A stretch of 64,000 nt of DNA from Mobula hypostoma. Lineage: Eukaryota. Shown in pieces: positions 17,182 to 61,478 of the stretch. How positions within the stretch are numbered: the stretch's first letter is position 1; every line of letters begins with the position of its first letter. Under the pieces are notes generated by a model that searched no databases, was not told the origin of the DNA, and was given only the letters and a program-made list of their open reading frames with translations. Where the stretch lies: positions 12,028,001-12,092,000 of the forward strand of contig NC_086126.1 in the NCBI RefSeq assembly GCF_963921235.1. Direction: 5' to 3'. A program made the position numbers and the translations under genes.

Positions 17182-20100
17182 TTAACAACGTGTGAATGTG
17201 TCCGTCCCCGTCCTGTTTCCAACGGAGAAAGACACAGGTGAGTAGAGACACGAGTCAGTGGAACTGGGAACATTCAGTTTCGCGTTTCACAGTGTGATCC
17301 AGGCTGCAGAATTCCCGCTTCATTTCCCCTGGTCACTTCATGTAATTGTCACATCGGAGTCCGGGTAACTTCAGCGTTTCCACCCAGTAATCCCAAACAG
17401 GGCGTTGTGAGGCAGGCAGAAGGGGTTAGAGTGAAACTCCCTCTTTGCTGCCGTATCACACACTCCTGAGGTCAGACACAGAGTGAAGCTCCATTCACAT
17501 CGTCCCATCACACACTCCCGGGGTCAGACACAGAGTGAAGCTCCCTCCACATCGTCCCATCACACACTCCCGGGGTCAGACACAGAGTGAAGCTCCCTCC
17601 ACACCGTCCCATCACACACTCCCGGAGTCAGACACAGAGTGAAGCTCCCTCCACGCCGTCCCATCACACACTCCCGGGGTCAGACACAGAGTGAAGCTCC
17701 CTCCACATCGTCCCATCACACACTCCCGGAGTCAGACACAGAGTGAAGCTCCCTCCACGCCGTCCCATCACTCACTCCCGGGGTCAGACACAGAGTGAAG
17801 CTCCCTCCACACCGTCCCATCACACACCCCCGGAGTCAGACAGAGAGTGAAGCTCCCTCTACACTGTCCCATCACACACTCCCGGGATCAGACACAGAGT
17901 GAAGCTCCCATTACACACACCCAGGGCAGGAACAGCTGAGGTTACGGACAGAGTCTCGGACTAACACTTTGGTGAATTACGATGTCACCCGTCCCATGTG
18001 ACCGGGCTCCTGGAATTCTGGGCCCTCTCTCTCGGTGCGGAAAATTTCCCAGCGGTTTGCACCGGAGCTGAACCCTTGCGGAGTAGCCGCATTTCAAGTT
18101 GGAATCCCTCCACTTCTGCAGCGCCTTTCACCAGCCAAGGGTGTCCTGGAGTTCGTTGTCACTCTCGCTCCCCACCGCCCCTTCATCAGGACGGGACTCA
18201 CTGCTCATTGTCTCCCCTCTCATTCCCATCCCCGCCCCCACCCTCACCACCTCTCCCATTGTCGGCGCTTCCCTAACACCGACACTCCCTCCGCTCTCAC
18301 CACCCACTCACGCAGCTCGACCCTCCCTCCTCATCCATCCACCTCTTTACAACGCTTCATCTTCATCCGCCCCTCCCATAGGACGACGCTGCCCACCCCT
18401 CACTGACCCCTACACCCCCGCTCACTGTACGACGCTCACTCACTACCCCTTCCCTACGGTGGCGCTTCCTCTTCACAGCCCCTCCCATGGCGCGGCGCTC
18501 CCTCGCACAGTGCAGCGTCCCCTCAGTGCTCAGATCTCAGGGGTGGGATTTGACCGCACGACCCCGTGGATTGTGGCGCGGTGAACAGTCTGGCGCACGG
18601 TCCCCTGGATCTGCGCGTCTACGCAAGAGATTCAGGACTTACCGGGTCGCCCCCCAGTTGCTGTCGACGGGGGAATTTGATCGGAGTAACCACATGCTCA
18701 TCAAAGTATCGTTTCCATTTATGACAAACATCTGTCCGGTCCACACTGTGACACTCCCCCGGACCGAATCTGAGCACAGAAAGTATTTTAAAATACTGTT
18801 ACTACCGTCCCTCAGTACAGGCCCTGTCGTAGCACAGGCCCTCCCGCAGTGCAGCGGTCCCACATTGTGACACTTCCCCCGCATCACCCCTCTGATAGCG
18901 CGACAGTCTCTCAGTACCTTGTTCAAAAAAAGGTAGTAGGGATAGTCCGGGTAATTATAGACCAGTCAGCCTTACGTCTGTGGTGGGAAAGCTGCCGGAA
19001 AAGATTCTTAGAGATAGGATCTATAGGCATTTAGAGAATCATGGTCTGATCAGGGACAGCCAGCATGGCTTTCTGAAAGGCAGATCGTGTCTAAAAAGCC
19101 TGAAAGAGTTCTTTGAGGAGGTGACCAGGGATATAGATGAGGGTAGTGCAGTGGATGTGATCTATATGGATTTTAGTAAGGCATTTGACAAGGTTCCACG
19201 CGGTAGGCTTATTCAGAAAGTCAGAAGGCATGGGATCCAGGGAAGTTTGGCCAGGTGGATTCAGAATTGGCTTGCCTGCAGAAGGCAGAGGGTGGTGGTG
19301 GAGGGAGTACATTCAGATTGGAGGTTTGTGACTAGTGGTGTCCCACAAGGATCTGTTCTGGGACCTCTACTTTTCGTGATTTTTATTAACGACCTGGATG
19401 TGGGGGTAGAAGGGTGGGTTGGCAAGTTTGCAGACGACACAAAGGTTGTTGGTGTTGTAGATAGTGTAGAGGATTGTCAAAGATTGCAGAGAGACATTGA
19501 TAGGATGCAGAAGTGGGCTGAGAAGTGGCAGATGGAGTTCAACCCGGAGAAGTGTGAGGTGGTACAGTTTGGAAGGACAAACTCCAAGGCAGAGTACAAA
19601 GTAAATGGCAGGATACTTGGTAGTGTGGAGGAGCAGAGGGATCTCGGGGTACATGCCCACAGATCCCTGAAAGTTGCCTCACAGGTGGATAGGATAGTTA
19701 AGAAAGCTTATGGGGTGTTAGCTTTCATAAGTTGAGGGATAGAGTTTAAGAGTCGCGATGTAATGATGCAGCTTTATAAAAATCTCGTTAGGCCACACTT
19801 GGAGTACTGTGTCGAGTTCTGGTCGCCTCACTATAGGAAGGACGTGGAAGCATTGGAAAAGGTACAGAGGAGATTTACCAGGATGCTGCCTGGTTTAGAA
19901 AATATGCATTATGATCAGAGATTAAGGGAGCTAGGGCTTTAGTCTTTGGAGAGAAGGAGGATGAGAGGAGACATGATAGAGGTGTACACGATATTAAGAG
20001 GAATAGATAGAGTGGACAGCCAGCGCCTCTTCCCCAGGGTCCACTGCACAATACAAGAGGACATGGCTTTGAGGTAAGGGGCGGGAAGTTCAACAGGGAT

Positions 20101-21151
20101 ATTAGAGGAAGGTTTTTTACTCAGAGAGTGGTTGGTGCGTGGAATGCACTGCCTGAGTCAGTGGTGGAGGCAGATACACTAGTGAAGTTTAAGAGACTAC
20201 TAGACAGGTATATGGAGGAATTTAAGATGGGGGCTTATATGGGAGACAGAGGGAGGGAGCCGCAGTGCCCCGGGAACTCGGGCAGAGAACGCGTGGATTA
20301 GCAACGTACCTGAGGTCCACTTTACCACAAACCCAAAGGTCGGCTGCTCGATATTGACCTGGAATCCGATTAGATCTCCTTCAACCTGCTGCCTAACGCT
20401 GGACACTGCGGATTTGTAGGTGCCTGTCAGGGTCCCGTCCTCGTTCATCATGATGTTCGCCATCGAATTCAGTTCATTAATCCAGCAGCCGGCCAGAGTC
20501 GGGACCTGAAATCAAGGTCACCTCATCGAATCTCGCCGGTCACCAGCAACTCCGTAGCGCCCACCTTTCAGGAAAATCCCACAGTTTATCAGGGCCAGCG
20601 ACGCAACCTTAAGGTGCAGTCACCACTGGTGTGGAGGAAGCATGGGGGGGGGGGGGCGTCATTCTACACAGCATGATCCCAGAGACTGGGTACAGCCGCA
20701 ATCCTGCCGAAGGAGTTCCGGCTGTCTGTCCTTCGGCGCGGAGCCCCGGTCACCGAGGGCTCGCAGTCGCAACCGGACTCGATAGATCCAGGAGTAGGAG
20801 GCGGACTTAACAAATCTCCGTGATTTCCGCGTAAGGACCCTGACTGATCTCCCGTCTCTCTAACCCAGGGTTGACCGGTCAGTGACGGGGAACAGGAACC
20901 CTGTCTGATTCTCTCTCTCTCTAACCCAGGGGTCGGAGAAGGGGAGCAGGAACCCTGGCTGAATCCCCACCTCTCTCAAACCCAGGGGTCACGGGGCAAC
21001 GATGGGGAGTTAATTCCCAACGCAAATATGAATCAATTGCCCCTAATTTTCCCGCAGTAATCCTATTTCCACGACTTACCACAATGGAACAAGAGGCACC
21101 GACGTTGCCCAGCGCCAACAGGAGAAACAGGCGGGGAAGTTTGCGCAGCAT
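17182..21151 (-). CDS. avd: Avidin-like protein A (4 exons: 21151-21080, 20505-20310, 18769-18643, 17212-17182; 141 aa)
   Basis: All introns GT-AG with phases 0/1/2. Spliced protein MLRKLPRLFLLLALGNVGASCSIV-VPTLAGCWINELNS...GTYKSAV...QPTFGFVVKW...SVTVWTGQ...MWLLRS...NWGATR-TGTDTFTRC has a signal peptide and the avidin motifs WxNxLxS, GxYxSAV, QPTFGFxVxW, WLLRS. Confidence 0.9.
17455..17915 (+). repeat. 52-bp minisatellite, about 9 units, in avidin A intron 3
   Basis: Unit GTCAGACACAGAGTGAAGCTCCCTCCACACCGTCCCATCACACACTCCCGGG at 17471, 17523, 17575 ... 17887. Confidence 0.95.
18920..20240 (+). mobile_element. CR1 LINE fragment inserted in avidin A intron 2
   Basis: QHGF...DFSKAFDKV...GVPQGSVLGP...KFADD; stop at 19733; absent from paralogs B and C. 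Confidence 0.92.
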
Positions 21152-22261
21152 GATGTCACCTCCGATCTGAGATGGAGCGCGCAGGTGCCAGGTAATATAC
21201 CCTGCCCAGGTGGATTGTGGGAAAAAGAGCGCAGGGTGGGTATGATGATTGGGCGATTGCGAAACCACATATATAACTGTACAGAATTGTATATTTCTGG
21301 ATAGTATATATGGAAGGCTGTGGTCCAGGTGCCGTGCGATGGGTATAGGCAGATTAAGTGGTTTTGGCACGGACTAGATGGGCCGAAGGGCCTGTTTCTG
21401 TGGTCTACTTCTCCATGACTCTATTTCCAAATTCTGCAGAATCACTGCTGCTGTATTTTTTTTTAAATACTTCATATCTATTTCACTCATCTGCTCCCCC
21501 CTCCCCCCGCCCCACACACACACTCCTCCAATCACGAACAGGAACGGCACGGCATCTGAAGACGCCAACCTGGCGTTGATCTTGAAGTGAACCTTGACAC
21601 TGATCCTGGGGTCAATCGGGCATTCATTGCGTCTGGATTTGGGGCAGGGTGGCGGCAATGTTTCAAGATTGCCGGCGGCACTAAACGGGGCGGTGTTGTC
21701 AGCAGGATCGGGGTCACTGGGTGAGGAGTGGGGAGGTGGAGGAAGGGGGGAGCAGAAAGGTATCAACGCAACGAAGAAAGGATAAGCGGGGTTTCAATAA
21801 GATATCTCCACGATCTCCATCAGCTTAGCCCCCCTACTCACTTTACACTTAGGACTGTGAGACTAACTACAGTTCCAAACCCATATTTAAGTTTGCTCCC
21901 GACGTTGACTGTGCATTGGATGCTTGCCAGAGTTCATGCGTAGTTTTTCACTGATTCCGTTGTACTGCTTTGTTCTACTGTGAATGCCCGCAAGAAAATG
22001 AATTTCGGGATTGCCGATGGATATTTCTACATAGTTTGATGATCAGTTTACTTGGAACTTTGATAATGAAGGCGCTGCTGTTCCCACCGGCAGAAAGAGG
22101 CTGGCGGAGTTCTATATAGGCAGGAGTTCGATCAGGAAACGTGGGTCTCATGGGATCTCTGCGTCCACTCACTTGGTTTCGTTGGGGTCGATTGCAAGAG
22201 GTTTAGAGTACAGGGGCGAGGGCCTTCCCGCCCCCCCCAATCCCAGTCTCAGAACGCCCCA

Positions 22262-23120
22262 CATATAACCGTATATAACCGTATATAACCATATAACCAT
22301 ATAACCATATAACAATTACAGCACGGAAACAGGCCATCTCGGCCCTTCTAGTCTGTGCCGAACTCTTACTCTCACCTAGTCCCACCGACCTGCACTCAGC
22401 CCATAACCCTCCATTCCTTTCCTGCCCATATATCTATCCAATTTAACTTTAAACGACAACATCGAACCTGCCTTAACTACTTCTGCTGGAAGCTCGTTCC
22501 ACACAGCTACCACTCTCTGAGTAAAGAAGTTCCCCCTCATGTTACCCCTAAACTTTTGTCCTTTAACTCTCAATTCATGTCCTCTTGTTTGAATCTTCCC
22601 CACTCTCAATGGAAAAAGCCTATCCACGTCAACTCTATCTATCCCCCTCATAATTTTAACCACCTCTATCAAGTCCCCCCTCAACCTAACACGCTCCAAA
22701 GAATAAATACCTAACTTGTTCAACCTTTCTCTGTAACTTAGGAGATGAAACCCAGGCAACATTTTAGTAAACCTCCTCTGTACTCTGTCGATTTTATTGA
22801 CAACTTTCCTATAACTCGGTGACCAGAACTGTACACAATATTCCAAAGTTGGCCTTACCAATGCCTTATACAATTTCAACATTACATCCCAACTCCTATA
22901 CTCAATGCTCTGATTTATAAAGGCCAGCATTCCAAAAGCTTTCTTCACCACCCTATCCACATGAGATTCCACCTTCAGGGAACTATGCACCATTATTCCT
23001 AGATCCCTCTGTTCTACTGCATTCTTCAATGTCCTACCATTTACCATGTCTGTCCTATTTTGATTAGTCCTACCGAAATGTAGCACCTCACATTTATCAG
23101 CATTAAGCTCCATCTCCCAG
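22262..23120 (-). mobile_element. CR1 LINE 3' part with (GGTTATAT)n tail
   Basis: ORF 22376-23206 KCEVLHFG...RPTLEYCVQFWSP...TRGH; absent from the mirror arm near 53340. Confidence 0.9.
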
Positions 23121-24289
23121 CAGTGAGGTGCCGTCACACGCCGACTGCTGCTCCTGAGCTCGGCAATTTTGAGAACAGTGAGATCCCACGGACGACGACG
23201 ATGCACAAGCCCCTTCCTGGGGGTAACGCAGCGCCCCCTAGGCTTTGCCAGCCTGACCCCGCGTCACTGCCCCGGTGAACGTTCCTGCACCCCTTCACTG
23301 TGAAACATTGTTTTTTAATAACTCGGTTTCTCTCCGGATTTGGCAAGAAGCGTTTATTCAATCCTCCCCCTTAAACAGAGGAGAGATTCTGCAAGAGCCA
23401 GAAATCCGGAGTAACAGACATCAAGTGCTGGAGGAACTCAGCAGGTCAGGCAGCATCTATGGGGAGGAATAAAATGTCCGTGTTTCGGATCGAACCCCCT
23501 TCAGCGGGGGCCCCGAAAAAGGATCTCGGCTCGAAGCGTCGACTCTTTATTCCCCCCCCCACCCCACCCCCGCATAAACGCTGCCAGACCGGCTGTGAGG
23601 TTGTGGGTATTTCTTTTTCCCGCTTATCGGGGACCAGCCTCCATCGCGCTGCGTGTCACTGCGGCCCTGCTGGGACGGGGGCCTCAGGAGGTACCGCGGG
23701 CTCTGGCAGCAGCGGAAACGTACATCACCATCCCACCGCCTCCCATAGCGAGCGAATTGCACTGCCCCCCCCCCCACCAAACACATACTCGTATCTCTCA
23801 TTCTAACAAGCTGGGGATGGGCTCTCCCTCAGTGAAGCGTGCAGACTGGAATGAGATTGTACGTGGACTCTGCGGCCAAACAATTGCAATCACCGGGGGG
23901 TGGGTGGGGAGGTGTTGAAGGAAATTTGGAACGCACCCAGAGGAGCTTTTCCTGTTTTTACAGGTGCATCGCGGCTTGGCACGGCAAACTGCACGACAAA
24001 GACAGCAAGAATCTGCAGGGAATCATGGACACAGTCCAGATCGTCACGGAAATCCGCCTCCCCTCCATTGGAGTCCGCACTCTACTCAAATAAAAAAGTG
24101 CTGGGGGAGACTCGGCAGGTCAGGTCAGCATCACTGGAGGGGAATAAAAGAGTCGATGTTTCAGGCCGAGGACCCTCTTCAGGATGCTTCATCAGGGCAT
24201 GAAGAGTCCCGGCGCGAAAGGTCGCCTGCTTGTTCCGCTCCGTTGGTGCTGCCTGGCCCATGTCGAGCTCCTACGGCGTTTGTTTTTGA

Positions 24290-24945
24290 TTATGAGAACA
24301 CTCAGTTCTCTTTGATTGTCATTTAGAAATGCATACATGCATTAAGAAATGATCCAATGTTCTTCCAGAGTGATATCACCGAAAACAGGACAAACCGAAG
24401 ACTAATATTGACAGAACCACTTAATTGTAACATTTAGTTACAGCAGTGCAAACCAATACCATAATTTGATAAAGAACAGACCATGGGCACAGTAAAAAAA
24501 AATCTCAAGTCCTGATCGACTCCCGAGTCCCCGATAGCAGGCGGCAAAAGGGAGAAACTCCCCGCCATAAACCTCCAGGCACTGACAACTTGTCGATGCA
24601 TTGGAAGCAGCCGACCACAGCCAACACTGAGTCCGTCCGTCCGAAAACTTCGAGCCTCCGACCAGCCCCTCCGATACAGCCTCCCGAGCGCCTTCGACCT
24701 CGTCCCGGCCGCTGAAACAAGCAAAGCTGACGATTCGGGGCCTTCAGCTCCGGAGATTCCGGTCACCACACTGTAGCAGCGGCCGCGAAGCGGCCATTTC
24801 AGAAGTTTCTCCAGATGTTCTTCTGTACTCTCACGTCCGTCTCCATCAAATCAGGATTGTGCACGGTCCCCTACTTGACAGATTACAGATATCATTCACT
24901 GGAGAGGCCGTGCGCGCTGCCGTCGCGCCGCCATCTTCTCCTCCT
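24290..24945 (-). mobile_element. About 650-bp non-autonomous retroelement family
   Basis: Related copies at 25770-26432 (+), 28195-28800 (-) and 51870-52465 (+); shared 3' end AATGACAAT...CATAATC. Confidence 0.6.
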
Positions 24946-25315
24946 CCTCCTTGTGCGCCTTGTTCGCGATTTCCAGCAACTGCAGAATCCCTTATGTTTA
25001 TGGTCTGCAGGTCCTGCTGCCTCGGTAGAGCAGTCAGCATAATCCGTTCACCCCAGACATTTTCCCTTCATCCCACTCTCTCCCTCATCGGGCCGAAGAT
25101 ACACGGACCGCCGGGCTCAAGGAGAGCTCAAAAACAACCTATTCATTAACTTTCAGGGATGTACATATTGTGTTTGAAGTTATTTATTTTATCTATCTAT
25201 TAATCAATCAATCTATCTATCTACTTGGTTATCTACCTATCGGCATAGCTACCTACCTATCTATCAATCAATCTACCTACCTGCGTATCTATCAATCTAC
25301 CTACCAATCTATCTG

Positions 25316-25765
25316 CAGTGCCTGAGAATAAAAAGGTATTCACCCGTCCTTGGAAGTTGTCATGTTTTATTGTTTTACAACATTGAATCACTGGATTTAA
25401 TTTAGCTTTTTGACATTGATCAAACAGAAAAAGACCCTTTCGTTTCAAAGCGAAAAGCGATCTCGACAAAGTGATCTAAATTAATTTCAAATATAAAACA
25501 CAAAATAATTGATCGCATAAGTATTCGCCCCTTCAAGTCAGTATTGAGCAGATGCACCTTTGGCAGCAATTACAGCCTTGAGTCTGTGTGGATAGGTCTC
25601 TAACAGCTTTGCACATCTGGACACTGGAATTTTTCCCCATTCTTCTTTACAAAACCGCTCAAGATCTGTCAGATGGAATGGGGATGGTGAGTGAACAGCC
25701 ATTTTCAAGTTCAGCCGCAAATTCTCAAATGCATTGAGGTCTGGACTTGGCCACTCCAGGAGATT
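25316..25765 (-). mobile_element. Tc1 transposon 3' fragment
   Basis: WPSPDLNAFENL...FCKEEWGKI...AAKGASAQY; terminal CAGTG; mirror copy within 50070-51496. Confidence 0.85.
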
Positions 25766-26586
25766 CACACAGAGAGTAGTGGGAGCGCCCGGCAGAGATC
25801 AGGCGGGGGGGGCGGGGGGGGGAGAGAGCAGCGCGCCGCGCGTGCGCAGCCCCCCGGTGAAAAACGATATCGTATCAGTTAAATAGGGGCCGTGGAAAAT
25901 CCTGATTTGATGGAGACAGACGTGAAAGCACAAAGGAACATCGGGAGAAATTTCTGAAACGCCAGTTCGCTGCCGTTGTTACTGCGCGGTCGGGAATCTT
26001 CCGGAGGGAAGGCCTCAAAATCTCCGGCTTTGCCTGCTGGTGGCGAACGAGATTGAGGTCGAATCGTTCGGACAGAGATAGCGCTCAGTACTCCGTGTCG
26101 GAGAGTTGATCAGAGCTCGAAGTTTTCGGATGACTCAGAGTCAGACTGCGGTCGGGCATGGCAGGGTGAGTTTTTCTTCCTTCTCCCGTCTGCGTGAGAT
26201 GTGGGACATTTGAGAGACTTTGAATTTTTTACTGTGCTCATGGACTTCTTCATCAAGTTATGGTATTGTTGCACTGTTGTAACTATATGTTATAATAATG
26301 TGGGGTTGTTAGATTTTTCAGTCTTGGTCTGTCCCGTATTTTGTGATATCACACCGGAGGAAATGTTGTATCATTTCTTAATGCATGCATTACTAAATGA
26401 CAATAAAAGAGGACTGCGTGTCTTCATAATCTAAATGTACTCCGAAACATACAGGAGGTGCGTCGTTTCCGGCGACAAAGAGCCTGCCCCCACCTTAATA
26501 ACCTGAACCCCCGTACTTTGGGAACCAGTGGAACGCATATGGAAATGGCCCCGAGTCTCAGTACCGTGTCGCCCAAAAACGTTTGT

Positions 26587-26658
26587 TTCCCGTACCGGGA
26601 GTCGAACCTGAGCCGCCTGGATGAAAACCAGGAATCCTAACCGCTAGACCATATGGGA
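26587..26658 (-). tRNA. tRNA-Glu (TTC) variant with several stem changes, possible pseudogene
   Basis: 72-nt match with about 4 substitutions; mirror of the 46614 copy. Confidence 0.7.
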
Positions 26659-32225: not shown

Positions 32226-32319
32226 TTTGGATCTTTGAATATATAGACAGTCGCAGACAATCCATAAAACGCAATGTACAAGTAACCTTGTAATAAATAA
32301 CAAGCCGCCTCCTCCTTCA

Positions 32320-49557: not shown

Positions 49558-50069
49558 ATATGGCCTGCTGAGTTCCTCCCGCATCTTGTGTGTATTTCTT
49601 TCCCGCGTATCGGCCTTGCAATTGTGCCGCAGCAGACCTACCGGCTGGGACTGGGGCATCAGGAGTTCCTGTGGACATCGGCAACAGCAGAGACCACCAC
49701 CCCTCCCCCACAACGACAGACCTGATCCTCCCCCCAAACCCCACCCCACGCACACTTATCTCTCATTCTAACAGGCTGGGGGAAGAACGCCCGTTCGGGG
49801 AGCCGTGCAGACGAGAATGCGGGGGCACACGTGGACACCGCAGCCAAGAAATTGCAACAGCCGCAGTCGGATCAGGAAATTGAAACGTCCTCAATGAGTC
49901 TTACCTATGTTCACAGACGCAGCGTAGAGGGCATTGTATCCAGGCGCATCGCGGCTTGGTACGGCAAACTGCTCTGCCAAGACAGCAAGAGATTGTTCAA
50001 GAGACTGATGAACAAACAGAGTGAAACCAGTCCTTCCCTCCATGGATTGCCTGCACTCCACACACACAC

Positions 50070-51496
50070 AAAAACTCTTTTCTGTCAAGGTGAAAATAGA
50101 TCTCTACAAAGCAATCTACATTAATTACAAATATAAACCGCAAAATAATTGATTGCCTATTCACCCCTCTTTACCATGACACACCAAATCATCACTGGTG
50201 CAGCCAATTGGTGTTAGAAGTCACATAAATTAGTTAAATGGGGATCGCCTGTGTGCAGTCAAGGTGTTTCAATTGATTGTTGTAAAAATTCACCCGTATC
50301 TGGAAGGTCCAACTGCTGGTGAGTCAGTATCCTGGCAAAAACTACACGATGAAGGCAAAAGAACACTCCAAGGAACTCTGCAAAAAGTTTATTAAAAGCA
50401 CAAGTCAGGAGATGGATGCAAGAAAATTTCCAGGTCACTGAATATCCCTTGGAGGACAGTTGAGTCAATCATCAAGAAATGGAAGGAATATGGCGCAGCT
50501 GTAAATCTGCCTGGAGCAGGCCGTCCTCAAAAACGGAGTGACTGTGCAAGAAGGGGACTAGTGAGGGAGGCCACCAAGAGACCCATGACAACTCTGGAGG
50601 GGTTACAAGCTTCAGTGGCTGAGAAGGGACAGACTGCGCACATACAACTGTTGCCCGGGTGCTCCACCAGTCGCAGTTTTATGGGAGAGTGGCAAAGAGA
50701 AATCCTGATGTAGTCTGCAAGAGAACTGTGAATTGAGAGATTTGTTTTCCATCAAGACAATGATCCCAAGCATAAAGTCAAACCTACACGGAAATGGCTT
50801 AAAAACCACAAAGTTAATAGAACGGAGAAATCTACAGCACATTACGGCCCCTTCGGCCCACGATGTTGTGCCGACCATGAAACCTACTCTAGAGACTGCC
50901 TTGAATTTCCCTCGTACATAACTCTCTGTTTTCCTGAGCTCCATGTACCTATCTGAGAGGCTGTTAAAAGACCCTATTGTATCCGCTTACACCACCATCC
51001 CCGGCAGTGTCTTCCGCGCTCCCATCTACTCTCTGTGTGAATGTCCTGGAGTGGCCAAGTCAGAGTCCAGACCTCAATCCAATTAAACATTTGCGGCTGA
51101 ACTTGAAAAGGGCTGTTCACTCACGATCCCCGTGCAATCTGACAGATCTTGAGCAGTTTTGAAAGGAAGAATGGGAAAAAATTCCAGTGTTCAGATGTGC
51201 GAAGCTGACAGAGACCTATCCACACAGAGTCAAGGCTGTAATTTCTGCCAAAGGTGCATCTACTAAATACTGACTTGAAGGGGCTAATACTTATGCGATC
51301 AATTATTTTGTGTTTCATATTTGTAATTAATTTAGATCACTTCGTCGAGATCGCTTTTCGCTTTGAAACGAAAGGGTCTTTTTCTGTTTTGATGAATGTC
51401 AAAAAGCCAAATTAAATCCAGTGATTCAATGTTGTAAAACAATAAAACATGAAAAATTCCAAGGAGGGGTGAATACCTTTTTATTCTGAGGCACTG
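50070..51496 (+). mobile_element. Internally deleted Tc1 transposon
   Basis: Transposase pieces (GCKKIS...SIIKKWK...GRP; HQDNDPKH; [11 protein letters not shown]) and terminal CACTG|TA. Confidence 0.85.
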
Positions 51497-54400
51497 TAGA
51501 TAGATTGGTAGGTAGATTGATAGATACATAGGTAGGTAGGTAGATTGATAGATAGGTAGGTAGGTATGCCGATAGGTAGATAGCCAAGTAGATAGATATA
51601 TTGATTGATTAATAGATAGATAAAATAAATAACTTCAAACACAATATGCACAATCCCTGAAAGTTAATGAATAGGTTGTTTTTGAGCTCTCCTTGAGCCC
51701 GGCGGTCCGTGTATCTTCGGCCCGATGAGGGAGAGAGTGGGATGAAGGGAAAATGTCTGGGGTGAACGGATTATGCTGACTGCTCTACCGAGGCAGCAGG
51801 ACCTGCAGACCATAAACACAAGAGATTCTGCTGATGCTGGAAATCGCGAACAAGGCGCACAAGGAGGAGGAGGAGAAGATGGCGGCGCGACGGCAGCGCG
51901 CGTGGCTTCTCCAGTGAATGATATCTGTAATCTGTCAAGTAGGGGACCGTGCACAATCCTGATTTGATGGAGACGGACGTGAGAGTACAGAAGAACATCT
52001 GGAGAAACTTCTGAAATGGCCGCTTCGCTGCCGCTGCTACTGTGTGGTAACCGGAAACTCCAGAGCAGAAGGCCCCGAATCCTCGGCTTTGCTTGTTTCG
52101 CGGCCGGGGTGAGGTCGAAGGCGCTCGGGAGGCTGTCGGCTGCTTCCAAGGCATCGGCAAGTTGTCAGTGCCTGGAGGTTTACGGCAGGGAGTTTCTCCC
52201 TTTTGCCGCCTGCGCTCGGGGACTCGGGAGTCGATCAGGACTTGAGATTTTTTTTTACTCTGCCCATGGTCTGCCCTTTATCAAATTATGGTATTGGTTT
52301 GCACTGCTGTAACTAAATGTTATAACTATGCAGTTCTGTCAGTGTTAGTCTTTGGTTTCTCCGGTTTTTCTGTGATATCACTCTGGAGGAACATTGTATC
52401 ATTTCTTAATGCATGTATGCATTTCTAAATGACAAACAAAGAGAACTGAGTGTTCTCATAATCAAAAACAAACGCCGGAGGAGCTCGACATGTCCAGGCA
52501 GCACCAACGGAGCGGAACAAGCAGGCAAAACAGTAAAAGCTCATCTGGGGGCGTTCCAAATTTCCTTCAGCACCCCTCCCGTGATTGCAATTGTTTGGCC
52601 GCAGAGTCCACGTACAATCTCATTCCAGTCTGCACGCCTCATTGAGGGAGAACCCATCCGCAGCTTGTTAGAATGAGAGATACGAGTGTATGTTGGGGGG
52701 CGGTGCAATTCGCTCGGTGTGGGAGGCGGCGGGATCGTGATGTACGTTTCCGCTGCTGCCAGAGCCCGCGGTACCTCCTGAGGCCCCCGTCCCAGCAGGG
52801 CCGCAGTGACACGCAGCGCGATGGAGGCTGGTCCCCGATAAGTGGGAAAAAGAAATACCCAGGACCTCACAGCCGGTCTGGCAGCGTTTATGCGGGGGTG
52901 GGGGGGGGGAAATAAAGAGCCGACGCTTCGAGCCGAGACCCTTTTTCGGGGCCCCGATGAACGGGGTTCGATCCGAAACACGGACATTTTATTCCTCACC
53001 ATAGATGCTGCCTGACCTGCTGAGTTCCTCCAGCACTTGGTGTCTGTTACTCCGGATTTCCGGCATTTGCAGAATCTCTCCTCTGTTTAAGGGGGAGGGG
53101 GTGAATAAACGCTTCTTGCCAAATCCTGAGAGAAACCGAGTTTTAACAAAAAACAAGGTTTCATGGTGAAGGGGTGCAGGAACTTTCACAGGAGCAGTGA
53201 CGCGGGGTCAGGCTGGCAATGCCTAGGGGGCGCTGCGTTACCCCCAGGAAGGGTCTTGCGCATCGTCGTCGTCCGTGGGATCGCACTGATCTCAAAATGG
53301 CCGAGCTCAGGTGCAACAGTCGGCGTGTGACGGGACACGGATGTGGGGCCTTATGAGATCGGGGTGAGGGTGGGGAAAGGCTCTCGCAATCGACCTCAAT
53401 GAATCGAAGTGAGTGGACGCCGAGATCCCGTGAGACCCACGTCTCCCGATCGAACTCCGGCCTGAATAGAACTCCGCCTGACTCCTTCTGCCGATGGGAT
53501 CAGCCGCCCCTTCCTTAACAAAGATCCAAGTAAACTGATCATCAGAGTATGCTGAAATCTCCATCGGCAATCCCGAAATTCATTTTTGCGGGCATTCACA
53601 GCAGAACAAGGACAGTACAATGGAATCAGTGAAAAACTACGCATGAACTCTGGCAAGCAGCCAATGCACAGTCGATGTCGGGAGCAAACTTAAATATGGT
53701 TTTGGAACTGTAGTTATCTCACAATCGTTAGTGTAAAGTGAGTAGAGCAGGGGGCTAAGCTGATGGAGATGGTGGAGATATCTTACTGAACCCCCGCTCA
53801 TCCTTTCTTCGTTGCGTTGACGCCTTTCTACTCTCCCCTCCCCCACCTCCCCACTCCTCACCCAGCCACCCCGATTCTGCTGACAACACCGCCGCGTTTA
53901 GCGCCGCCGGAAATCTTGGATCTTTGCCTCCACCCTGCCCCAATTCCAGACGCAATGAATGCCTGATTGACGTTCGGTTTACCGCCCCCAGGCTCAGTGT
54001 CCAGGTGCACTTCAAGATCAACGCCAGGTTGGCGTTTTCAGATGCCGTGCCGTTCCTGTTCGTGATTGGAGGGGTGTGTCTGTGTGGGGGCGCTGGGGCG
54101 GGATAGATGGGTGAAACAGATATGAACTATTTAAAAAATATATAGCAGCAGTGATTCTGCAGAATTTGGAAATAGAGTCATGGAGAAGTAGACCACAGAA
54201 ACAGGCCCTTCGGCCCATCTAGTCCGTGCCAAAACCTCTTAAACTGCCCACACCTATCGCACTGCACCTGGACCACAGCGCTCCATATATTCTATCCAGA
54301 AATATACAATTATATACACTTATATATCTGGTTTCGCAATCGCCCTATCATCATACTAACCCTGCGCTCAACGTTGTCGGTTACATCCTTGTGATCTCGT

Positions 54401-54552
54401 CTGCCCACCCGAACCGCCATCTGCTGATTACTTGCTTTTCCAGTTCGGAGAATTCGAATTGTAACATTGCCAGCCTTTTTTTCTCAGAATCCACCTGGGC
54501 AGGGTATATTACCTGGCACCTGCGCTCTCCATCTCCGATCAGAGGAGACACC

Positions 54553-57458
54553 GTGCTGCGGAAACTTCCCCGCCTGAGTCTCCTTTTGGCACGGGGCATC
54601 GTCGGTACCTCTTCGTCGGTGGTAAGTCGTGGAAATGGGATTACTGCAGGAAAATTAGGGGCAATTGATTCTTATTTGCGTTGGGAATTTGCCTTCGAAA
54701 CGGAGGTGAGGCCCGCCAAGTGTCCTGCAAGCGCCCAATCATCGCACCCACCCTGCGCACAACTTTGTCGGTCACATCCTTGTGATCACGCCGCCTCTGC
54801 CATCGCTGCCCCGTTACCCCTGGGTTAGAGGGGGAGGGGTATCAGGGAGGGTTTCTTCTCCCCATTACTGACCGCTCAGCCCTGGGTTAGTTTCAACCAG
54901 GGGTCCTGCATCCCATCGCCACCCGGTGACCCCTCGCTCAGAGAGAGGGGAAATCACCCAGCCTTTCTGCTCCCCATCGTTGACCGGTCACCTCTGGGAT
55001 AGAGAGGGGGGGGGGGAATCAGCCAGAATCCTTACGCGTAGGTCACAGAAAATGAGCATTGTTAATTGCGCTTCCCACTCCTGAATCTATCGAGTTCGGT
55101 TGCGACTGCAAGCCCTCAGGGGGCTCCGTGCCAAAGGACAGACAGCCGGAACTCCTTCGCCAGGATTGCGGCTGTACAGTCTCTGGGATCATGCTGTGTA
55201 GAATGCCCCCCTCACCCCCTACCCCATGCTTCCTCCAAAGCAGTGGTGACTGCACCTTAAGGTTGCGTCCCTGATGTCCCTGATAAACTGTGGGATTTTC
55301 CGGAAATATAGGAGGCGGGCGCCACAGAGATGCGGCTGACCGGCGAGATTCGATGAGGTGACCTTGCTTGCAGGCCCAGACTCTGACGGGCTGCTGGACT
55401 AATGAGCTGGGGTCGACGGCGTACATCAAGAAGGACGAGGACGGGACCCTGCGAGGCTTCTACATTTCGGCAGTGTCCAGCGCTGAGACTCCGGTTGAAG
55501 GGGAACTAATCGGATTCCAGGTCGATATCGAGCAGCCGACCTTTGGGTTTGTGGTAAAGTGGACCTCAGGTACGTTGCTATTCCGCCCGTTCCCTGCCCG
55601 AGCTCCCGGGGCTCTGCGGCTCCCTCCCTCTGTCTCCTCGTCTCCACCTGAGGTGACGCACCCCCGCGGGTGGGAGACAGCGCAGGAGCGCTGCAGTGTG
55701 TGGGGGGGGGGCAGTACTGAGTCTCTCTCAGTCCTGTAGGAGGGGGCGCCACCGAGACGGCCCAGCGCTCTGGGAAGGACGGCAAAACCGAGGGCATGCC
55801 ATGCTGTGGGATGGGGGTCTGAAGAGGGAGCGCGAGGTGGGGGCGACACACTGTGGGAGAGGAAGTCAGCGGGGAGCGCCCCGCTGTGGGAGGGGCGGTA
55901 CTGAGGGAGCGCTGCACTGCGGGAGGGGGACTGTGCTACGGGAGGGCCTGTACTGAGGGTCGGTAGTAATAGGTCAGACATTATTTTAAAATTCTTTCTG
56001 TGCCCAGAGGAGGTCCGGGGGGATGTCTCAGTGTGGACTGGACAGATGTTTGAAGACCAAACTTTGAAGACCATGTGGTTAGCCCGATCACATTCCTCCG
56101 TCGACAGCAACTGGGAGGCGACCGTGTAAGTTCTGAATCTCTTGGGCAGACGCGCAGATCCGGGGGACTGTGCGCCAATCTCTTCACCGCGCCCCAATCC
56201 CACTCCTGAGATCTGAGCTCAAGACTGCACCGTGCGAGGGAGCGCCACACTATGGGAGGGGCTATGAAGAGGAAGGGTTATTGAGTGAACGTCGTACAAT
56301 TGGGGGGGGTAGGTGTCAGTGAGGGGTGGGTAACGCCGCCCTATGGGAGGGGCTGATGAAGAGGAAACGTTGTACAGAGGTGGATGGATGAGAAGGGAGG
56401 GTCGAGCTGCGTGAGTGGGTGGTGAGAGCGGAGGGAGTGTCGGTGATAGGGAAGCGCCGACAGTGGGAGAGGTGGTGAGGGTGGGGGCGAGGAGGGGAGT
56501 GAGAGGGGAGCCAATGAGCAGTGAGTCCCGTCCTGATGAAGGGGCGGTGGGGAGGGAGACTGACAACGAACTCCAGGACATCCTTGGCTGGTGAAAGGCG
56601 CTGCAGAAATGGAGGGATTCCACCATGAAATCCGGCTACTAAGCAAGGATTCAGCTCCGGTGCAAACGGCTGGGAAATTCTGCGCACCAGAATTCCAGGC
56701 GCAAAGGGCTTTGTCCCCGGTCCCTGCGTCACATGTGACGGGTGACACCGTGATTCAGCAAAGTGTTATTCTGAGATTCTGTCCATAACCCCAACTGTTC
56801 CTGTCCTGGGTGTGTGTGATGGCACGGTGGGGAGGGAGCTTCACTCTGTGTCTGACCCTGGGAGTGAGTGATGGGATAGTGTAGAGGGAGCTTCACTCTG
56901 TGTCTGACCCCGGGAGTGTGTCATGGGACGGTGTGGAGGGAACTTCACTCTGTGTCTGGCCCCGGAAGACTGTGATGGGACGGTGTAGAGGGAGCTTCAC
57001 TTTGTGTCTGACCCCGGGAGTGTGTCATGGGACGGTGTAGAGGGAGCTTCACTTTGTGTCTGACCCCGGGAGACTGTGATAGGACGGTGTAGTGGGAGCT
57101 TCACTTTGTGTCTGACCCCGGGAGTGTGCGATGGGACGGTGTGGAGGGAGTTCCACTCTAACCCCTTCTGCCTGCTCACGACTCCCTGTTTTGTGATTAC
57201 CGGGTGGGTACTCCGATGTGACAATTACATAAAGTGACCGGGGGAAGTGAAGCGGGAATTCTCCAGACTGGGTCACTCTGTGAAAGGCGGATCTGAATGT
57301 TCCCAGTTCCACCTGAGTCGTGTCTCTAATCACCTGTCTCTTGCTCTGTTGGAAACAGGACGGGGATGGACGTGTTCACTCGTTATATCGAGAAGTGTGG
57401 ATCCACGGACGGAGACGGAAGTGAGCGGAAATATGACCCCAGCAAGGAAGGCTCGTAG
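54553..57458 (+). CDS. Avidin-like protein B (exons 54553-54621, 55374-55569, 56008-56125, 57359-57458); start codon is GTG
   Basis: GT-AG introns, frame intact: VLRKLPRLSLLLARGIVGTSSSV-AQTLTGCWTNELGS...GFYISAVSS...QPTFGFVVKWTS-EEVRGDVSVWTGQ...MWLARS...NWEATV-TGMDVFTRYIEKCGSTDGDGSERKYDPSKEGS. Confidence 0.8.
56820..57160 (-). repeat. 52-bp minisatellite, about 6 units, in avidin B intron 3
   Basis: GGGAGCTTCACTCTGTGTCTGACCCCGGGAGTGTGT... period 52. Confidence 0.93.
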
Positions 57459-58578
57459 GGGAGATGGGGCGCCAGGTGCGATGGGCACGGCTTCCGCTGC
57501 CTTTCAATGTCTGTAATCGGCCGATAAATCATTATAAATCACAATCTCATTAAAAGAAACATTTTAACCTCCAGATTTCGGTGCCGACTGGACGTGTCTC
57601 TCCATACAGTGAGGGCAGGTGTGGGGAGAGGTGGGAAGGTGCGGACAGTCACAAATAGAGAGCAAGGGCTACGCTGAGGCTAAGTGGGAGGTCGGTAGTT
57701 CGTCCGTAAGTCTTTGAGAGGTCTCCGCTGAAGGGTCAGATAACAGCGGGGTGGCAGCTGTCCCTGATCACGGTGGTGCGTGCATCTTCGGTCCGATGGG
57801 GGAGAGAGAGGGATGAAGGGGGAATGTTTGGGGTCAGTGGATGATGCTGACTGCTCCACCGGGGCAACAGGACCTGCAGACCATAAACACAAGAGACTCT
57901 GCAGATTTCGCGCCGGGACTCTTCATTCCCTGATGAAGCATCCTGACGAGGGGCCTCGGCCTAAAACATCGACCCTTTTATTCTCCTCCAGTGATGCTGA
58001 CCTGACCTGCCGAGCCTCCCCCAGCATTTTTTTATTTGAGTAGAGTGCGGACTCGAATGGAGGGGAGGCTGATTTCCGTGACGATCTGGACTGTGTCCAT
58101 GACCCCGAACAGTTTCTTGCTGTCTTTGCCGTGCAGTTTACCGTACCAAATAAAATATAAAAAATATAGCAGCAGTGATTCTGCAGAATTTGGAAAAGGA
58201 GTCATCGAGAAGTAGACCACAGAAACAGACCCTTCGGCCCATCTAGTTCGTGCCAAAACCACTTAAACTGCCCACACCCATCACACTGCACCCGGACCAC
58301 AGCCCTCCATACTCTACCGTCCAGAAATATACAATTCTGTATAGTTATATATATGACTTCGCAAGCGCCCATTCATCACACCAACCCTGCGCTCAACTTT
58401 GTCTGTCACATCCTTGCGATCACGTCTGCCCACCCCAATCGCAATCTGCCGACTACTCACTTTTTCAGTTCGGAGAATTCGAGTTGTAACATTGCCAGCC
58501 CTTTTTTTCTCAGAATCCACCTGGGCAGGGTATATTACCTGGCACCTGCGTTCTCCATCTCCGATCGGAGGTGACATC

Positions 58579-61478
58579 ATGCTGCGCAAACTTCCCCGCC
58601 TGAGTCTCCTGTTGGCGTTGGGCATCGTCGGTGCCTCTTGTTCCATTGTGGTAAATCGTGGAAATAGGATTACTGCGGGAAAATTAGGGGCAATTGATTC
58701 ATATTTGCGTTGGGAATTAACTCCCCATCGTTGCCCCGTGACCCCTGGGTTTGAGAGAGGTGGGGATTCAGCCAGGGTTCCTGCTCCCCTTCTCCGACCC
58801 CTGGGTTAGAGAGAGAGAGAATCAGACAGGGTTCCTGTTCCCCGTCACTGACCGGTCAACCCTGGGTTAGAGAGACGGGAGATCAGTCAGGGTCCTTACG
58901 CGGAAATCACGGAGATTTGTTAAGTCCGCCTCCTACTCCTGGATCTATCGAGTCCGGTTGCGACTGCGAGCCCTCGGTGACCGGGGCTCCGCGCCGAAGG
59001 ACAGACAGCCGAAACTCCTTCGGCAGGATTGCGGCTGTACCCAGTCTCTGGGATCATGCTGTGTAGAATGACCCCACCCCCACCCCCAATGCTTCCTCCA
59101 CACCAGTGGTGACTGCACCTTAAGTTTGCGACGCTGGCCCTGATAAACTGTGGAATTTTCCGGAAAGGTGGGCGCTACGGAGTTGCTGGTGACAGGCGAG
59201 ATTCGATGAGGTGACCTTGATTTCAGGTCCCGACTCTGGACGGCTGCTGGATTAATGAACTGAATTCGACGGTGACCATTACGGTGGACAAGAACAGGAC
59301 CCTGACAGGCACCTACAAATCCGCAGTGTCCACAAATGGGACATGGGCTGAAGGGGATCTAATCGGATTCCAGGTCGATATCGAGCAGCCGAACTTTGGG
59401 TTTGTGGTAAAGTGGACCTCAAGTACGTTGCTAATCCGCCCGTTCCCTGCCCGAGCTCCCGGGGCTCTGCGGCTCCCTCCCTCTGTCTCCTCGTCTCCAC
59501 CTGAGGTGACGCACCCCCGCGGGTGGGAGACAGCGAAGGAGCACGGCAGTGTGTGGGGTGGGCAGTACTGAGACTCTCTCAGTCCTGTGGGAGGGGCGCC
59601 ACCGAGACGGCCCAGCGCTCTGGAAAGGACGGCAAAACCGAGGGCATGCCATGCTGTGGGATGGGGGTCTGAAGAGGGAGCGCGAGGTGGGGGCGACACA
59701 CTGTGGGAGAGGAGGTGAACGGGGAGCGCCCCGCTGTGGGAGGGGCGGTACTGAGGGACTGTCACGCTATCAGGGGGATGATCCGGGGGAAGTGTCACAA
59801 TATGGGACTGCTGCACTGCGGGAGGGCCTGTGCCTGTACTGAGGGACGGTAGTAACAGTATTTTAAAATCTTTTCTGTGCTTAGAATCGGTCTGGGGGAG
59901 TGTCACAGTGTGGACCGGACAGATGTTTGGAAAAGATACTTTGATGACCATGTGGTTACTCCGATCAAGTGTCTCCGTCGGCAGCAACTGGGGGGCGACC
60001 CGATAAGTCCTGAGTCTCTTGCGTAGACGCGCAGATCCAGGGGACCGTGCGCCAGACTGTTCACCGCGCCACAATCCACGGGGTCGTGAGGTCAAATCCC
60101 ACCCCTGAGATCTGAGCACTGAGGGGGCGCTGCCCTGTGCGAGGGAGCGCCGCGTCATGTGAGGGGCTGTGAAGAGGAAGCGCCACGCTACGGAAGGGGT
60201 ATTGTGTGAGGGTCGGACAGTGGGCGGGGGTGTAGGGATGAGTGAGGGGCGGGTAGCGTCGCCCTATGGGAGGGGCGGTTAAGGAGGAAACGTTGTACAG
60301 AGGTGGATGGATGAGGAGGGAGGATCCCGCTGCGTGAGTGGGTGGTGAGAGCGGAGGGAGTGTCGGTGACAGGGAAGCGCCGACAATGGGAGAGGTGGTG
60401 AGGGTGGGGGCGGGGAGGGGAGTGAGAGGGGAGTCAATGAGCAGTGAGTCCCGTCCTGATGAAGGGGCGGTGGGAAGGGAGAGTTACAACGAACTCCAGG
60501 CTGGTGAAAGGCGCTGCCGAAATGGAGGGATTCCACCTTGAAATCCGGCTACTCAGCAAGTATTCAGCTCCGGTGCAAACGACGGGGAAATTCTCCGCTC
60601 CGGGAGAGAGCCCTGAGGGTCCGGAATTCCAGGCTTTGTTCCCGGTCCCTGGGTCACACCGTGATTCACCAAAGTGTTAGCCCGAGACTCTGTCCGCAAC
60701 CCCAACTGTTCCTGCCGTGGGTGTGTGTGATAGAGGGAGCTTCACTCTGTGTCTGACCCCGGGAGTGTGTGATGGGACGGTGTAGAGGGAGCTTCACTCT
60801 GTGTCTGACCCCGGGAGTGTGTGATGGGACGGTGTGGAGGGAGCTTCACTCTGTGTCTGACCCCAGAAGTGTGTGATGGGACGGTGTGGAGGGAGCTTCA
60901 CTCTGTGTCTAACTCGGGGAGTGTATAACAGGACAGTGTAGAGGGAGTTCACTCTGTGTCTGACCCCGGGAGTGTGTGATGGGACGGTGTGGAGGGAGCT
61001 TCACTCTGTGTCTGACCCCAGAAGTGTGTGATGGGACGGTAAAGAGGGAGTTTCACTCTGTGTATGACCCCGGGAGTGTGTGATGGGACAGTGCAAAGGG
61101 AGCTTCGCTCTGTGTCTGACCCTGGGAGTGTGTGATACGACAGCAAACAGGGAGTTTCACTCTAACCCCTTCTGCCTGCTCACAACTCTCTGTTTTGGGA
61201 TTACCGGGTGGAAACGCTGAAGTTACCCGGACTCCGATGTGACAATTACATAAAGTGACCGGGGGAAGTGAAGCGGGAATTCTCCGGCCTGATCACTCTG
61301 TGAAAGGCGGATCTGAATGTTCCCAGTTCCACCTGACTCGTGTCTCTGATCACCTCTCTCTTTCTCCGTTGGAAACAGGACGGGGATGGACGTGTTTCGG
61401 CGTCGTAAAGAGCAGTGTGGATCCACGGACGGAGACGGAAGTGAGCGGAAATGTGACCCCAGCAAGGAAGACTTGTAG
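58579..61478 (+). pseudogene. Avidin-like gene C (exons 58579-58650, 59227-59422, 59885-60002, 61379-61478) with mutated exon 3 donor
   Basis: Open frames in all exons, but the exon 3 donor reads CG|ATAAGT where A has CG|GTAAGT; read-through gives CGA TAA. Confidence 0.75.
60720..61165 (-). repeat. 52-bp minisatellite, about 8 units, in avidin C intron 3
   Basis: Same unit as 17455-17915, inverted. Confidence 0.93.

What the first reader, a model, noticed from the sequence alone, without database searches (positions are those of the whole stretch)
17182..61478. Hidden cluster of three spliced avidin-like genes
Seen: three paralogs can be assembled from four exons each, with matching intron phases, a signal peptide and the complete avidin beta-barrel motifs. 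The ORF track shows only fragments. Known: avidins are secreted biotin-sequestering proteins described in birds, frog, zebrafish and bacteria. Inference: this is a lineage-specific expanded avidin family in a probable cartilaginous fish, a candidate for egg, mucus or innate-defence function. I cannot tell whether it has already been described.
Basis: partly seen in the sequence, partly recalled or inferred. Interest (0 to 1): 0.75.

Follow-up and report, generated by a model that had tools for sequence, protein, structure and literature searches.

The report
Avidin gene trio in devil ray
The window holds three real four-exon avidin-family genes of the devil ray Mobula hypostoma. They are already in NCBI's annotation, only one looks intact, and avidins of cartilaginous fish were catalogued in a 2026 paper, so this is a solid but ordinary gene cluster.

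Summary
Each has four exons with intron phases 0/1/2. Exons 2 and 3 match Pfam Avidin in every copy.

Only c1 is intact. c2 has GTG where the ATG should be. c3 has AT instead of GT at the intron-3 donor, with a stop codon directly behind it.

The cluster is not hidden. c1 matches NCBI XP_062892378.1 and c3 matches XP_062892272.1, both named "streptavidin-V2-like" in Mobula hypostoma. c2 is the C-terminal 160 residues of XP_062892271.1. A 2026 paper (PMC13425791) already catalogues multi-copy avidins in Chondrichthyes.

The c1 protein folds as an eight-stranded avidin barrel. It keeps most biotin-contact residues and is predicted to form a tetramer. Its mature part is 115/117 identical to the M. 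birostris ortholog.

The copies sit in a large inverted duplication plus a tandem duplication, with a gene-conversion tract between c1 and c3. Four RNA-like runs of the species showed no contig on any c1 exon.

Interest is low.

The parts
17182..21151 (-). c1, the intact avidin-family gene. Exons 21151-21080, 20505-20310, 18769-18643 and 17212-17182 (stop included); 141 aa. It equals NCBI XP_062892378.1, 'streptavidin-V2-like'.
   Evidence: Searches give the gene model, with ATG and GT..AG at every intron. One search gives the Pfam Avidin hits. One search shows 140/141 identity to P0035. One search shows a CDS span of 3970 nt, equal to 21151..17182. Searches give the fold.
54553..57458 (+). 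c2, an avidin-family copy without a start codon (GTG at 54553). Exons 54553-54621, 55374-55569, 56008-56125 and 57359-57458. NCBI joins it to upstream TE-like exons as the 308-aa XP_062892271.1.
   Evidence: Searches give the model and Pfam hits. Searches show that residues 149-308 of P0044 equal the c2 model.
58579..61478 (+). c3, an avidin-family copy with a lost intron-3 donor (AT at 60003-60004) and a TAA at 60004-60006. Exons 58579-58650, 59227-59422, 59885-60002 and 61379-61478. The NCBI model XP_062892272.1 stops after exon 3.
   Evidence: Searches give the model. One search shows 129/129 identity to P0041, which ends ...GATR. One search gives a CDS span of 2543 nt, equal to 57464..60006.
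16273..31727 (.). Arm A of a large inverted duplication, with c1 at its outer end.
   Evidence: blastn chains 16273-18918, 20242-21235, 21227-22200, 23128-25788, 26465-28153 and 29361-31727 match 62262..42334 in reverse at 84-94% identity.
42334..62262 (.). Arm B of the inverted duplication. It holds an extra tandem duplication, 54132-57648 (c2) and 58156-61667 (c3).
   Evidence: 54132-54689 matches 58156-58718 at 88%, and 54892-57648 matches 58767-61667 at 80%.
20506..21235 (-). Probable gene-conversion tract between c1 and c3, covering the 5' flank, exon 1 and intron 1. Its counterpart is 58495-59226.
   Evidence: intron 1 is 98.1% identical (11/574 differences) against 91.6% in the other introns (132/1564). 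Fisher p = 4e-9.
18926..20242 (+). Retroelement with a reverse-transcriptase ORF, inserted in intron 2 of c1 only.
   Evidence: One search shows the insertion in the alignment. One search gives RVT_1 at E 8.5e-29 for ORF 18980-19735.
17455..17909 (.). A 52-bp tandem repeat (8.8 copies) in intron 3. Shorter arrays lie in c2 and c3.

Best explanation
The window is a stretch of the Mobula hypostoma (lesser devil ray) genome. It carries a three-copy avidin-family cluster built by an inverted segmental duplication plus a tandem duplication.

c1 is an intact gene. It encodes a signal peptide followed by an eight-stranded beta-barrel of about 117 residues. That barrel most likely assembles as an avidin-type homotetramer and sequesters biotin outside the cell. 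Such a protein could starve microbes of the vitamin or carry it.

c2 (start codon lost) and c3 (intron-3 donor lost, premature stop) are most likely young pseudogenes or crippled copies in this species. In M. birostris all three counterparts are annotated as full-length.

Shown here: family membership, gene structures, the two lesions, the fold, conservation of contact residues, the duplication architecture and the existing annotation. Inferred: secretion, tetramer formation, biotin binding and biological role.
For: Sequence family:
- Pfam Avidin hits both large exons of every copy.
- phmmer against PDB gives xenavidin at 2e-20 and chicken avidin at about 1e-18 for the c1 protein.

Fold:
- The AlphaFold2 model of the c1 protein has mean pLDDT 87.6 and eight strands.
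- Foldseek best hits are zebavidin, xenavidin and avidin, with TM by target 0.81-0.87 and rmsd 1.7-2.3 A.

Biotin contacts, chicken numbering, read from the alignment:
- Kept: N12, S16, Y33, V37, W70, S75, T77, W97 and W110.
- Conservative changes: T35S, T38S, F79W and N118D. The last two are the streptavidin states as I remember them.

Oligomer:
- The homotetramer prediction scored 0.93 against a best control of 0.01.
- That mark was reached by 21 of 30 proteins solved as pairs of one chain and by 0 of 23 solved as single chains.
- The runs agree in at least 96% of contacts, and partner pLDDT is 89-90.
- The pass may come from the model's memory of solved avidin tetramers.

Conservation and identity:
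- The mature c1 protein is 115/117 identical to M. birostris XP_072101635.1, which suggests purifying selection.
- Identity to the RefSeq models and equal CDS spans are shown.
- The lesions in c2 and c3 are read directly from the sequence. They are mirrored by NCBI's truncated model for c3 and chimeric model for c2.
Against: - No contig lies on any c1 exon in four RNA-like runs of the species at 90% likeness or more. Only intronic repeats are covered. The tissues are unknown to me, so this is weak evidence.
- F72 of chicken avidin is Ser here. The L3,4 loop differs and the L5,6 loop carries a 3-residue insertion, so affinity or ligand could differ.
- The avidin C4-C83 disulfide is absent (GQMF instead of GQCF).
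- Both lesions are single transitions in one assembly. I could not check them against reads because the read-laying run was already used.
Confidence: 0.8

Rival explanations
1. All three copies are working genes. c2 would start at an upstream or non-AUG codon. c3 would splice by a non-canonical donor or act as a truncated protein.
For: All exons are open and in phase. NCBI gives protein models for all three. The c2-type exon 3 is nearly the same in a stingray protein (P0042), so this paralog type has been kept for a long time.
Against: c2 has no in-frame ATG in exon 1. NCBI's 308-aa model buries the signal peptide behind 148 residues taken from TE-like exons. The c3 model ends before the last strand, which carries the N118/D128-equivalent residue and closes the barrel. 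No nearby GT donor avoids the TAA. c3 also changes near-invariant positions, G47R and PTFGF to PNFGF.
Confidence: 0.08
2. The paralogs are under diversifying selection on the ligand-binding loops, so the copies bind different ligands or bind biotin with different strength. This would be neofunctionalisation rather than decay.
For: Between c1 and c3, exon 2 has 21.5 replacement against 3.5 silent differences. dN/dS is about 2 in exon 2 and 1.65 overall. Exon 2 is 86.7% identical while intron 1 is 98.1% identical. The changes cluster in the L1,2 and L3,4 loop regions.
Against: dN does not differ significantly from dS (Fisher p 0.09-0.35). The contrast with intron 1 is explained by a conversion tract that ends at the start of exon 2. 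Exon 2 dS (0.08) equals the divergence of the other introns (8.4%). The faster copy, c3, carries a disabling lesion, so relaxed constraint is enough to explain it. c1 itself is almost unchanged against M. birostris.
Confidence: 0.08
3. The whole cluster is a silent relic in this species, and c1 is not expressed either.
For: There are zero contigs on the c1 exons in four RNA-like runs. Two of the three copies are already broken.
Against: c1 keeps its ATG, reading frame, all splice sites and 115/117 mature residues against a sister species. Avidins are typically expressed in a tissue- and stage-restricted or inducible way (established knowledge for chicken avidin), so four runs of unknown tissue are not enough.
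Confidence: 0.04

Closest known systems
NCBI RefSeq models of Mobula hypostoma: XP_062892378.1 and XP_062892272.1 ('streptavidin-V2-like') and XP_062892271.1 ('uncharacterized protein LOC134339576'), assembly GCA_963921235.1
   Same: These are the same genes. c1 is 140/141 identical, c3 is 129/129 identical, and c2 is identical to residues 149-308. CDS spans are equal.
   Different: My c1 model keeps one more Val at the exon-1 donor (GTG|gtaagt), as the M. birostris model does. NCBI extends c3 and c2 upstream into doubtful exons. It does not flag the lost start codon or the lost donor.
Avidin-like genes of Mobula birostris: XP_072101635.1 and the tandem pair XP_072102142.1 / XP_072102143.1
   Same: The cluster is orthologous. 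The c1 ortholog is 95% identical overall and 115/117 identical in the mature part. A tandem pair of 160-aa genes lies on the same strand.
   Different: All three M. birostris models are full-length. Its tandem pair is 98% alike and is a mosaic of c2-like exon 2 and c3-like exons 3 and 4. In M. hypostoma c2 and c3 are 69% alike and both are damaged.
Fish avidins catalogued in PMC13425791 (FEBS Open Bio 2026), the 'second clade' without the Cys13-Cys90 disulfide
   Same: Chondrichthyan avidins occur with several copies per species. The Tyr and Trp biotin-contact residues are conserved. The classical disulfide is absent, with GQMF here.
   Different: Mobula is not named in the paper's text or in the supplements held as text. 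The paper gives no locus architecture and no pseudogene calls.
Chicken avidin, the AVR family and Xenopus xenavidin (PDB 1avd, 1wbi, 2uyw)
   Same: They share the Pfam family and the eight-stranded barrel. They also share the neighbour-subunit Trp and a clustered multigene family prone to gene conversion. The last point is established knowledge for chicken AVD/AVR. Sequence identity is 41-44% over about 120 residues.
   Different: There is no C4-C83 disulfide, and a Cys sits directly before the first Trp with one at the C-terminus. The L5,6 loop has a 3-residue insertion. F72 is Ser, and Asp replaces Asn118. The host is a live-bearing ray, not an egg-layer.

Membership tests
Avidin/streptavidin family (Pfam PF01382) | Sequence match to the family HMM above the curated cutoff | tested here: met
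   exon 2 scores 44.1, 47.8 and 45.7 bits against a cutoff of 24. Exon 3 scores 33.7, 23.4 and 26.3 bits, so c2 exon 3 alone is just under the cutoff. The full c1 protein against PDB avidins gives E 1e-18 to 2e-20.
Avidin/streptavidin family (Pfam PF01382) | Eight-stranded antiparallel up-and-down beta-barrel | tested here: met
   For c1 only. The AF2 model has pLDDT 87.6 and eight strands. Foldseek against zebavidin, xenavidin and avidin gives TMt 0.81-0.87. c3 as encoded lacks strand 8.
Avidin/streptavidin family (Pfam PF01382) | Biotin-contact residues (chicken N12, S16, Y33, T35, V37, T38, W70, F72, S73, S75, T77, F79, W97, N118) | tested here: met
   From the alignment, N33, S37, Y53, V57, W86, S94, T96 and W115 are kept. 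T35S, T38S, F79W and N118D are conservative changes. F72 is Ser, and the S73 region is shifted by a 3-residue insertion. The list of contact residues comes from established structural work and is recalled, not retrieved here.
Avidin/streptavidin family (Pfam PF01382) | Tetramer with a Trp from the neighbouring subunit (chicken W110) closing the site | tested here: inconclusive
   W127 aligns with W110. The four-copy prediction scored 0.93 against a best control of 0.01. Residues 124-128 touch residues 35 and 57 of a neighbour. The pass may come from memory of solved avidin tetramers.
Avidin/streptavidin family (Pfam PF01382) | High-affinity biotin binding, measured | not testable with these tools
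   This needs the recombinant protein and a binding assay.
Vertebrate secreted avidins | N-terminal signal peptide | tested here: inconclusive
   By eye, MLRKLPRLFLLLALGNVGASCS has a basic start, a Leu-rich core and a small-residue end. Residues 1-21 have low pLDDT. No signal-peptide predictor was available. c2 has Arg in the core and no ATG.
Vertebrate secreted avidins | Intramolecular disulfide C4-C83 (chicken numbering) | tested here: not met
   GQMF replaces GQCF, and there is no Cys at the position of C4. This matches the 'second clade' of fish avidins in PMC13425791, so it does not exclude membership.
Vertebrate secreted avidins | Four-exon gene with the signal peptide on exon 1 | tested here: met
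   four exons with phases 0/1/2, and exon 1 holds the signal peptide only. The comparison with the chicken AVD gene rests on memory and was not retrieved here.

The most novel reading that the evidence does not exclude
The myliobatiform-specific growth of this avidin subfamily may be tied to live-bearing with uterine 'milk' (histotrophy). An intact copy such as c1 would be secreted into the uterine fluid or onto the embryo's surfaces as a biotin-withholding defence. Paralogs would be repeatedly reshuffled by gene conversion and lost species by species. This would be the first avidin role described outside egg-laying vertebrates.
Probability: 0.1. Interest if true: 0.5.

Novelty: new member of a known kind. 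Interest (0 to 1): 0.2.

Why it matters
The finding matters little beyond annotation quality. It shows that two of the three RefSeq avidin-like models in Mobula hypostoma rest on damaged genes, and that one model is a chimera with transposon-like exons. Only c1 is a good candidate for a working ray avidin.

A ray avidin that lacks the classical disulfide and has an altered L5,6 loop could interest groups who engineer biotin binders. The contrast between M. hypostoma (one intact copy) and M. birostris (three full-length models) offers a small natural experiment on how dispensable avidin copies are. That fits the zebrafish knockout result of PMC13425791.

Tried and rejected
- RNA evidence. Four RNA-like runs of the species (X18, X31, X20, X19) were laid on 17100-21200 at 90% likeness or more. 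No contig fell on any exon, and only the intron repeats were covered. This is no proof of silence. The tissues are unknown, and c2 and c3 exon 2 are under 90% identical to c1. Both run searches and the one read-laying run are now used, so the two lesions could not be checked against DNA reads.
- Positive selection. dN/dS is above 1 in all pairs but not significantly so. I rejected it as the main reading.
- A fourth copy. tblastn with 16 avidin proteins found none in arm A or anywhere else in the window.
- Loci of the Mobula genomes. DNA could not be fetched because the sample files are too large, so I could not compute orthologous dN/dS or compare locus architecture.
- Folding the models directly. 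The NCBI proteins P0035, P0041 and P0044 served instead.
- Literature. A search for avidin together with stingray, histotroph, trophonemata or Mobula found nothing relevant.
- Assembly artefact. I rejected this for the inverted duplication. The arms are only 84-94% alike, and c1 and the c2/c3 pair have separate orthologs in M. birostris.
Full report
**What is in the sequence.** A motif scan of all six frames found avidin-like exon pieces in three places only. An alignment of the three regions then gave three four-exon models.
- c1, minus strand: 21151-21080, 20505-20310, 18769-18643, 17212-17182; 141 aa.
- c2, plus strand: 54553-54621, 55374-55569, 56008-56125, 57359-57458.
- c3, plus strand: 58579-58650, 59227-59422, 59885-60002, 61379-61478.

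Intron phases are 0, 1 and 2 in each copy.

Pfam Avidin (PF01382) hits exon 2 of every copy at 44-48 bits against a cutoff of 24. It hits exon 3 at 23-34 bits. tblastn with 16 avidin proteins found no further copy in the window.

**Two copies are damaged.**
- c2 has GTG where c1 and c3 have ATG. The open frame upstream holds no ATG. Its signal-peptide core reads LLLARG.
- c3 has ccg|ATaagt at the intron-3 donor, where c1 has ccg|GTaagt and c2 has cgt|GTaagt. Reading through gives CGA TAA, so the product ends at ...NWGATR without the last strand. No nearby GT avoids this stop.
- c1 has an ATG, open exons and GT..AG at all introns.

So 'three complete paralogs' is only partly right.

**Whose genome, and is the cluster hidden?** An exhaustive HMMER search with c1 exon 2 and two word-index searches led to ray proteins that NCBI names 'avidin-like'.
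- c1 is 140/141 identical to XP_062892378.1, 'streptavidin-V2-like [Mobula hypostoma]'.
- c3 is 129/129 identical to XP_062892272.1, which ends exactly at ...GATR.
- c2 is identical to residues 149-308 of XP_062892271.1, 'uncharacterized protein LOC134339576'.

The CDS spans on the 21.85-Mb contig of GCA_963921235.1 are 3970 nt and 2543 nt. These equal 21151..17182 and 57464..60006 of the window. The window is therefore Mobula hypostoma, a myliobatiform ray, and all three copies are already annotated.

NCBI's models reflect the lesions. The c3 model stops at the read-through TAA. The c2 model borrows 148 residues from upstream exons, one of them at 49777-49959, in a region whose ORFs recur elsewhere in the window like transposon fragments.

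**Literature.** PMC13425791 (FEBS Open Bio 2026) searched 25 chondrichthyan genomes. It reports avidins in cartilaginous fish in two clades, with several copies per species, for example Carcharodon carcharias 1, 2A and 2B. The biotin-contact residues are conserved, and the second clade lacks the Cys13-Cys90 disulfide. Mobula is not named in its text or in the supplements held as text.

**Fold and function of c1.** The family comparison gave these results.
- phmmer of the c1 protein against PDB gives xenavidin at 2e-20 and chicken avidin at about 1e-18.
- An AlphaFold2 model built on a 31-sequence alignment has mean pLDDT 87.6, above 90 over most of the mature part, and eight strands.
- Foldseek returns zebavidin, xenavidin, avidin and AVRs at TM by target 0.81-0.87 and rmsd 1.7-2.3 A.

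In the alignment the chicken contact residues behave as follows.
- Kept: N12, S16, Y33, V37, W70, S75, T77, W97 and W110.
- Conservative changes: T35S, T38S, F79W and N118D.
- F72 is Ser, and the L5,6 loop has three extra residues.
- GQMF replaces GQCF, so the classical disulfide is absent.

A Cys directly before the first Trp and one or two C-terminal Cys are shared by most fish sequences in the alignment. They may form a different disulfide, but that is inference.

A four-copy complex prediction scored 0.93 against a best control of 0.01.
- That mark was reached by 21 of 30 proteins solved as pairs of one chain and by 0 of 23 solved as single chains.
- Runs agree in at least 96% of contacts, and partner pLDDT is 89-90.
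- The W127 region touches the neighbour's binding-site residues.
- Because avidin tetramers are solved, this pass may be memory rather than evidence.

I infer that c1 encodes a secreted, tetrameric biotin binder. Binding itself is untested.

**Evolution of the cluster.** A self-comparison shows a large inverted duplication. Arm A is 16273-31727 and arm B is 62262-42334, at 84-94% identity. Arm B also holds a tandem duplication, 54132-57648 and 58156-61667. c1 sits at the outer end of arm A. c2 and c3 sit at the outer end of arm B.

A maximum-likelihood tree places all three copies in a myliobatiform-specific clade (support 100/99).
- That clade lies inside a batoid clade (99/96).
- c1 and c3 are sisters (90/84).
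- c2 groups with a Hemitrygon protein (81/95).

M. birostris has a c1 ortholog whose mature part is 115/117 identical. It also has a tandem pair of 160-aa genes that are 98% alike and combine a c2-like exon 2 with c3-like exons 3 and 4. This pattern points to repeated gene conversion among paralogs. It also shows that the three-gene layout predates the split of the two Mobula species.

Note s1-142830 said that exon 2 differs almost only at replacement sites while intron 1 is nearly identical. I tested this.
- Between c1 and c3, intron 1 is 98.1% identical and exon 2 is 86.7% identical. The other introns are 91.6% identical.
- Exon 2 has 21.5 replacement against 3.5 silent differences. dN/dS is about 2 there and 1.65 overall.
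- dN against dS is not significant (p 0.09-0.35).
- Intron 1 is significantly more similar than the other introns (p 4e-9).
- Exon 2 is only mildly more diverged than the other introns (p 0.03).
- Exon 2 dS (0.08) equals the intron background.

The simplest reading is a conversion tract over the 5' flank, exon 1 and intron 1 that ends at the start of exon 2. Relaxed constraint on the damaged c3 adds to it, since c3 also changes near-invariant positions (G47R, and PTFGF to PNFGF). Diversifying selection is not excluded, but the data do not require it.

**Expression.** Runs of the same species label that look like RNA were laid on 17100-21200 at 90% likeness or more. The four exon-bearing bins had zero or near-zero depth. 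Only the 52-bp tandem repeat and the retroelement in intron 2 were covered, heavily. Unique introns were also empty, which fits RNA rather than DNA libraries. This gives no support for expression in those samples. Their tissues are unknown to me, so it does not show silence.

**Verdict.** It is not hidden and not new as a family, and only one of the three copies is intact. The new details are modest:
- the two lesions;
- the chimeric NCBI models;
- the inverted-plus-tandem architecture with a conversion tract;
- the contrast with M. birostris.

Noticed in passing
window 47856-48226 (minus strand): This looks like the first coding exon of a two-pore-domain potassium channel, with TM1, the cap helices and the first pore helix. 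phmmer against PDB gives KCNK10 at E 4.6e-20, then KCNK1, KCNK2 and KCNK4. Degenerate, frame-shifted copies seem to lie near 32451-32865 and 39866-40261. Pfam alone gave no hit.
   Followed up: partly
window 16273-31727 and 42334-62262: A large inverted duplication has arms of about 15-20 kb at 84-94% identity and a transposon-rich spacer of about 10 kb. A 489-bp inverted pair at 94% identity (33883-34371 and 41709-42195) lies inside the spacer.
   Followed up: partly
window 17455-17909, with shorter arrays in c2 and c3 intron 3: A 52-bp tandem repeat has 8.8 copies at 93% match. Contig depth in the RNA-like runs is extremely high, so it belongs to an abundant transcribed repeat family.
   Followed up: no
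window 18926-20242: A retroelement with a reverse-transcriptase ORF (RVT_1, E 8.5e-29, ORF 18980-19735 on the plus strand) is inserted in intron 2 of c1. It is absent from c2 and c3. Many related copies are transcribed.
   Followed up: partly
window 48245-54552 and 57464-58578: NCBI's models add upstream exons to c2 and c3. The 308-aa XP_062892271.1 uses 49777-49959 and other pieces. XP_062892272.1 starts at 57464, six bases after the c2 stop. These extensions put the signal peptide inside the protein and look like annotation artefacts.
   Followed up: partly
window 16520-16958 and its mirror at about 61523-62107: Arrays of 10-, 20- and 58-bp repeats rich in C and A create long open frames rich in His, Pro and Thr on both arms. 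This is low-complexity DNA, not genes. Pfam finds nothing.
   Followed up: partly
window 14046-14318: A run of 273 N (an assembly gap or masked stretch) lies here.
   Followed up: no
window 21080-21088 (c1 exon-1 donor): Tandem donors lie 3 nt apart (ATT|GTG|GTAAGT). NCBI's M. hypostoma model uses the upstream one, giving 140 aa. The M. birostris and c3 models use the downstream one, giving one more Val. Only the end of the signal peptide is affected.
   Followed up: yes
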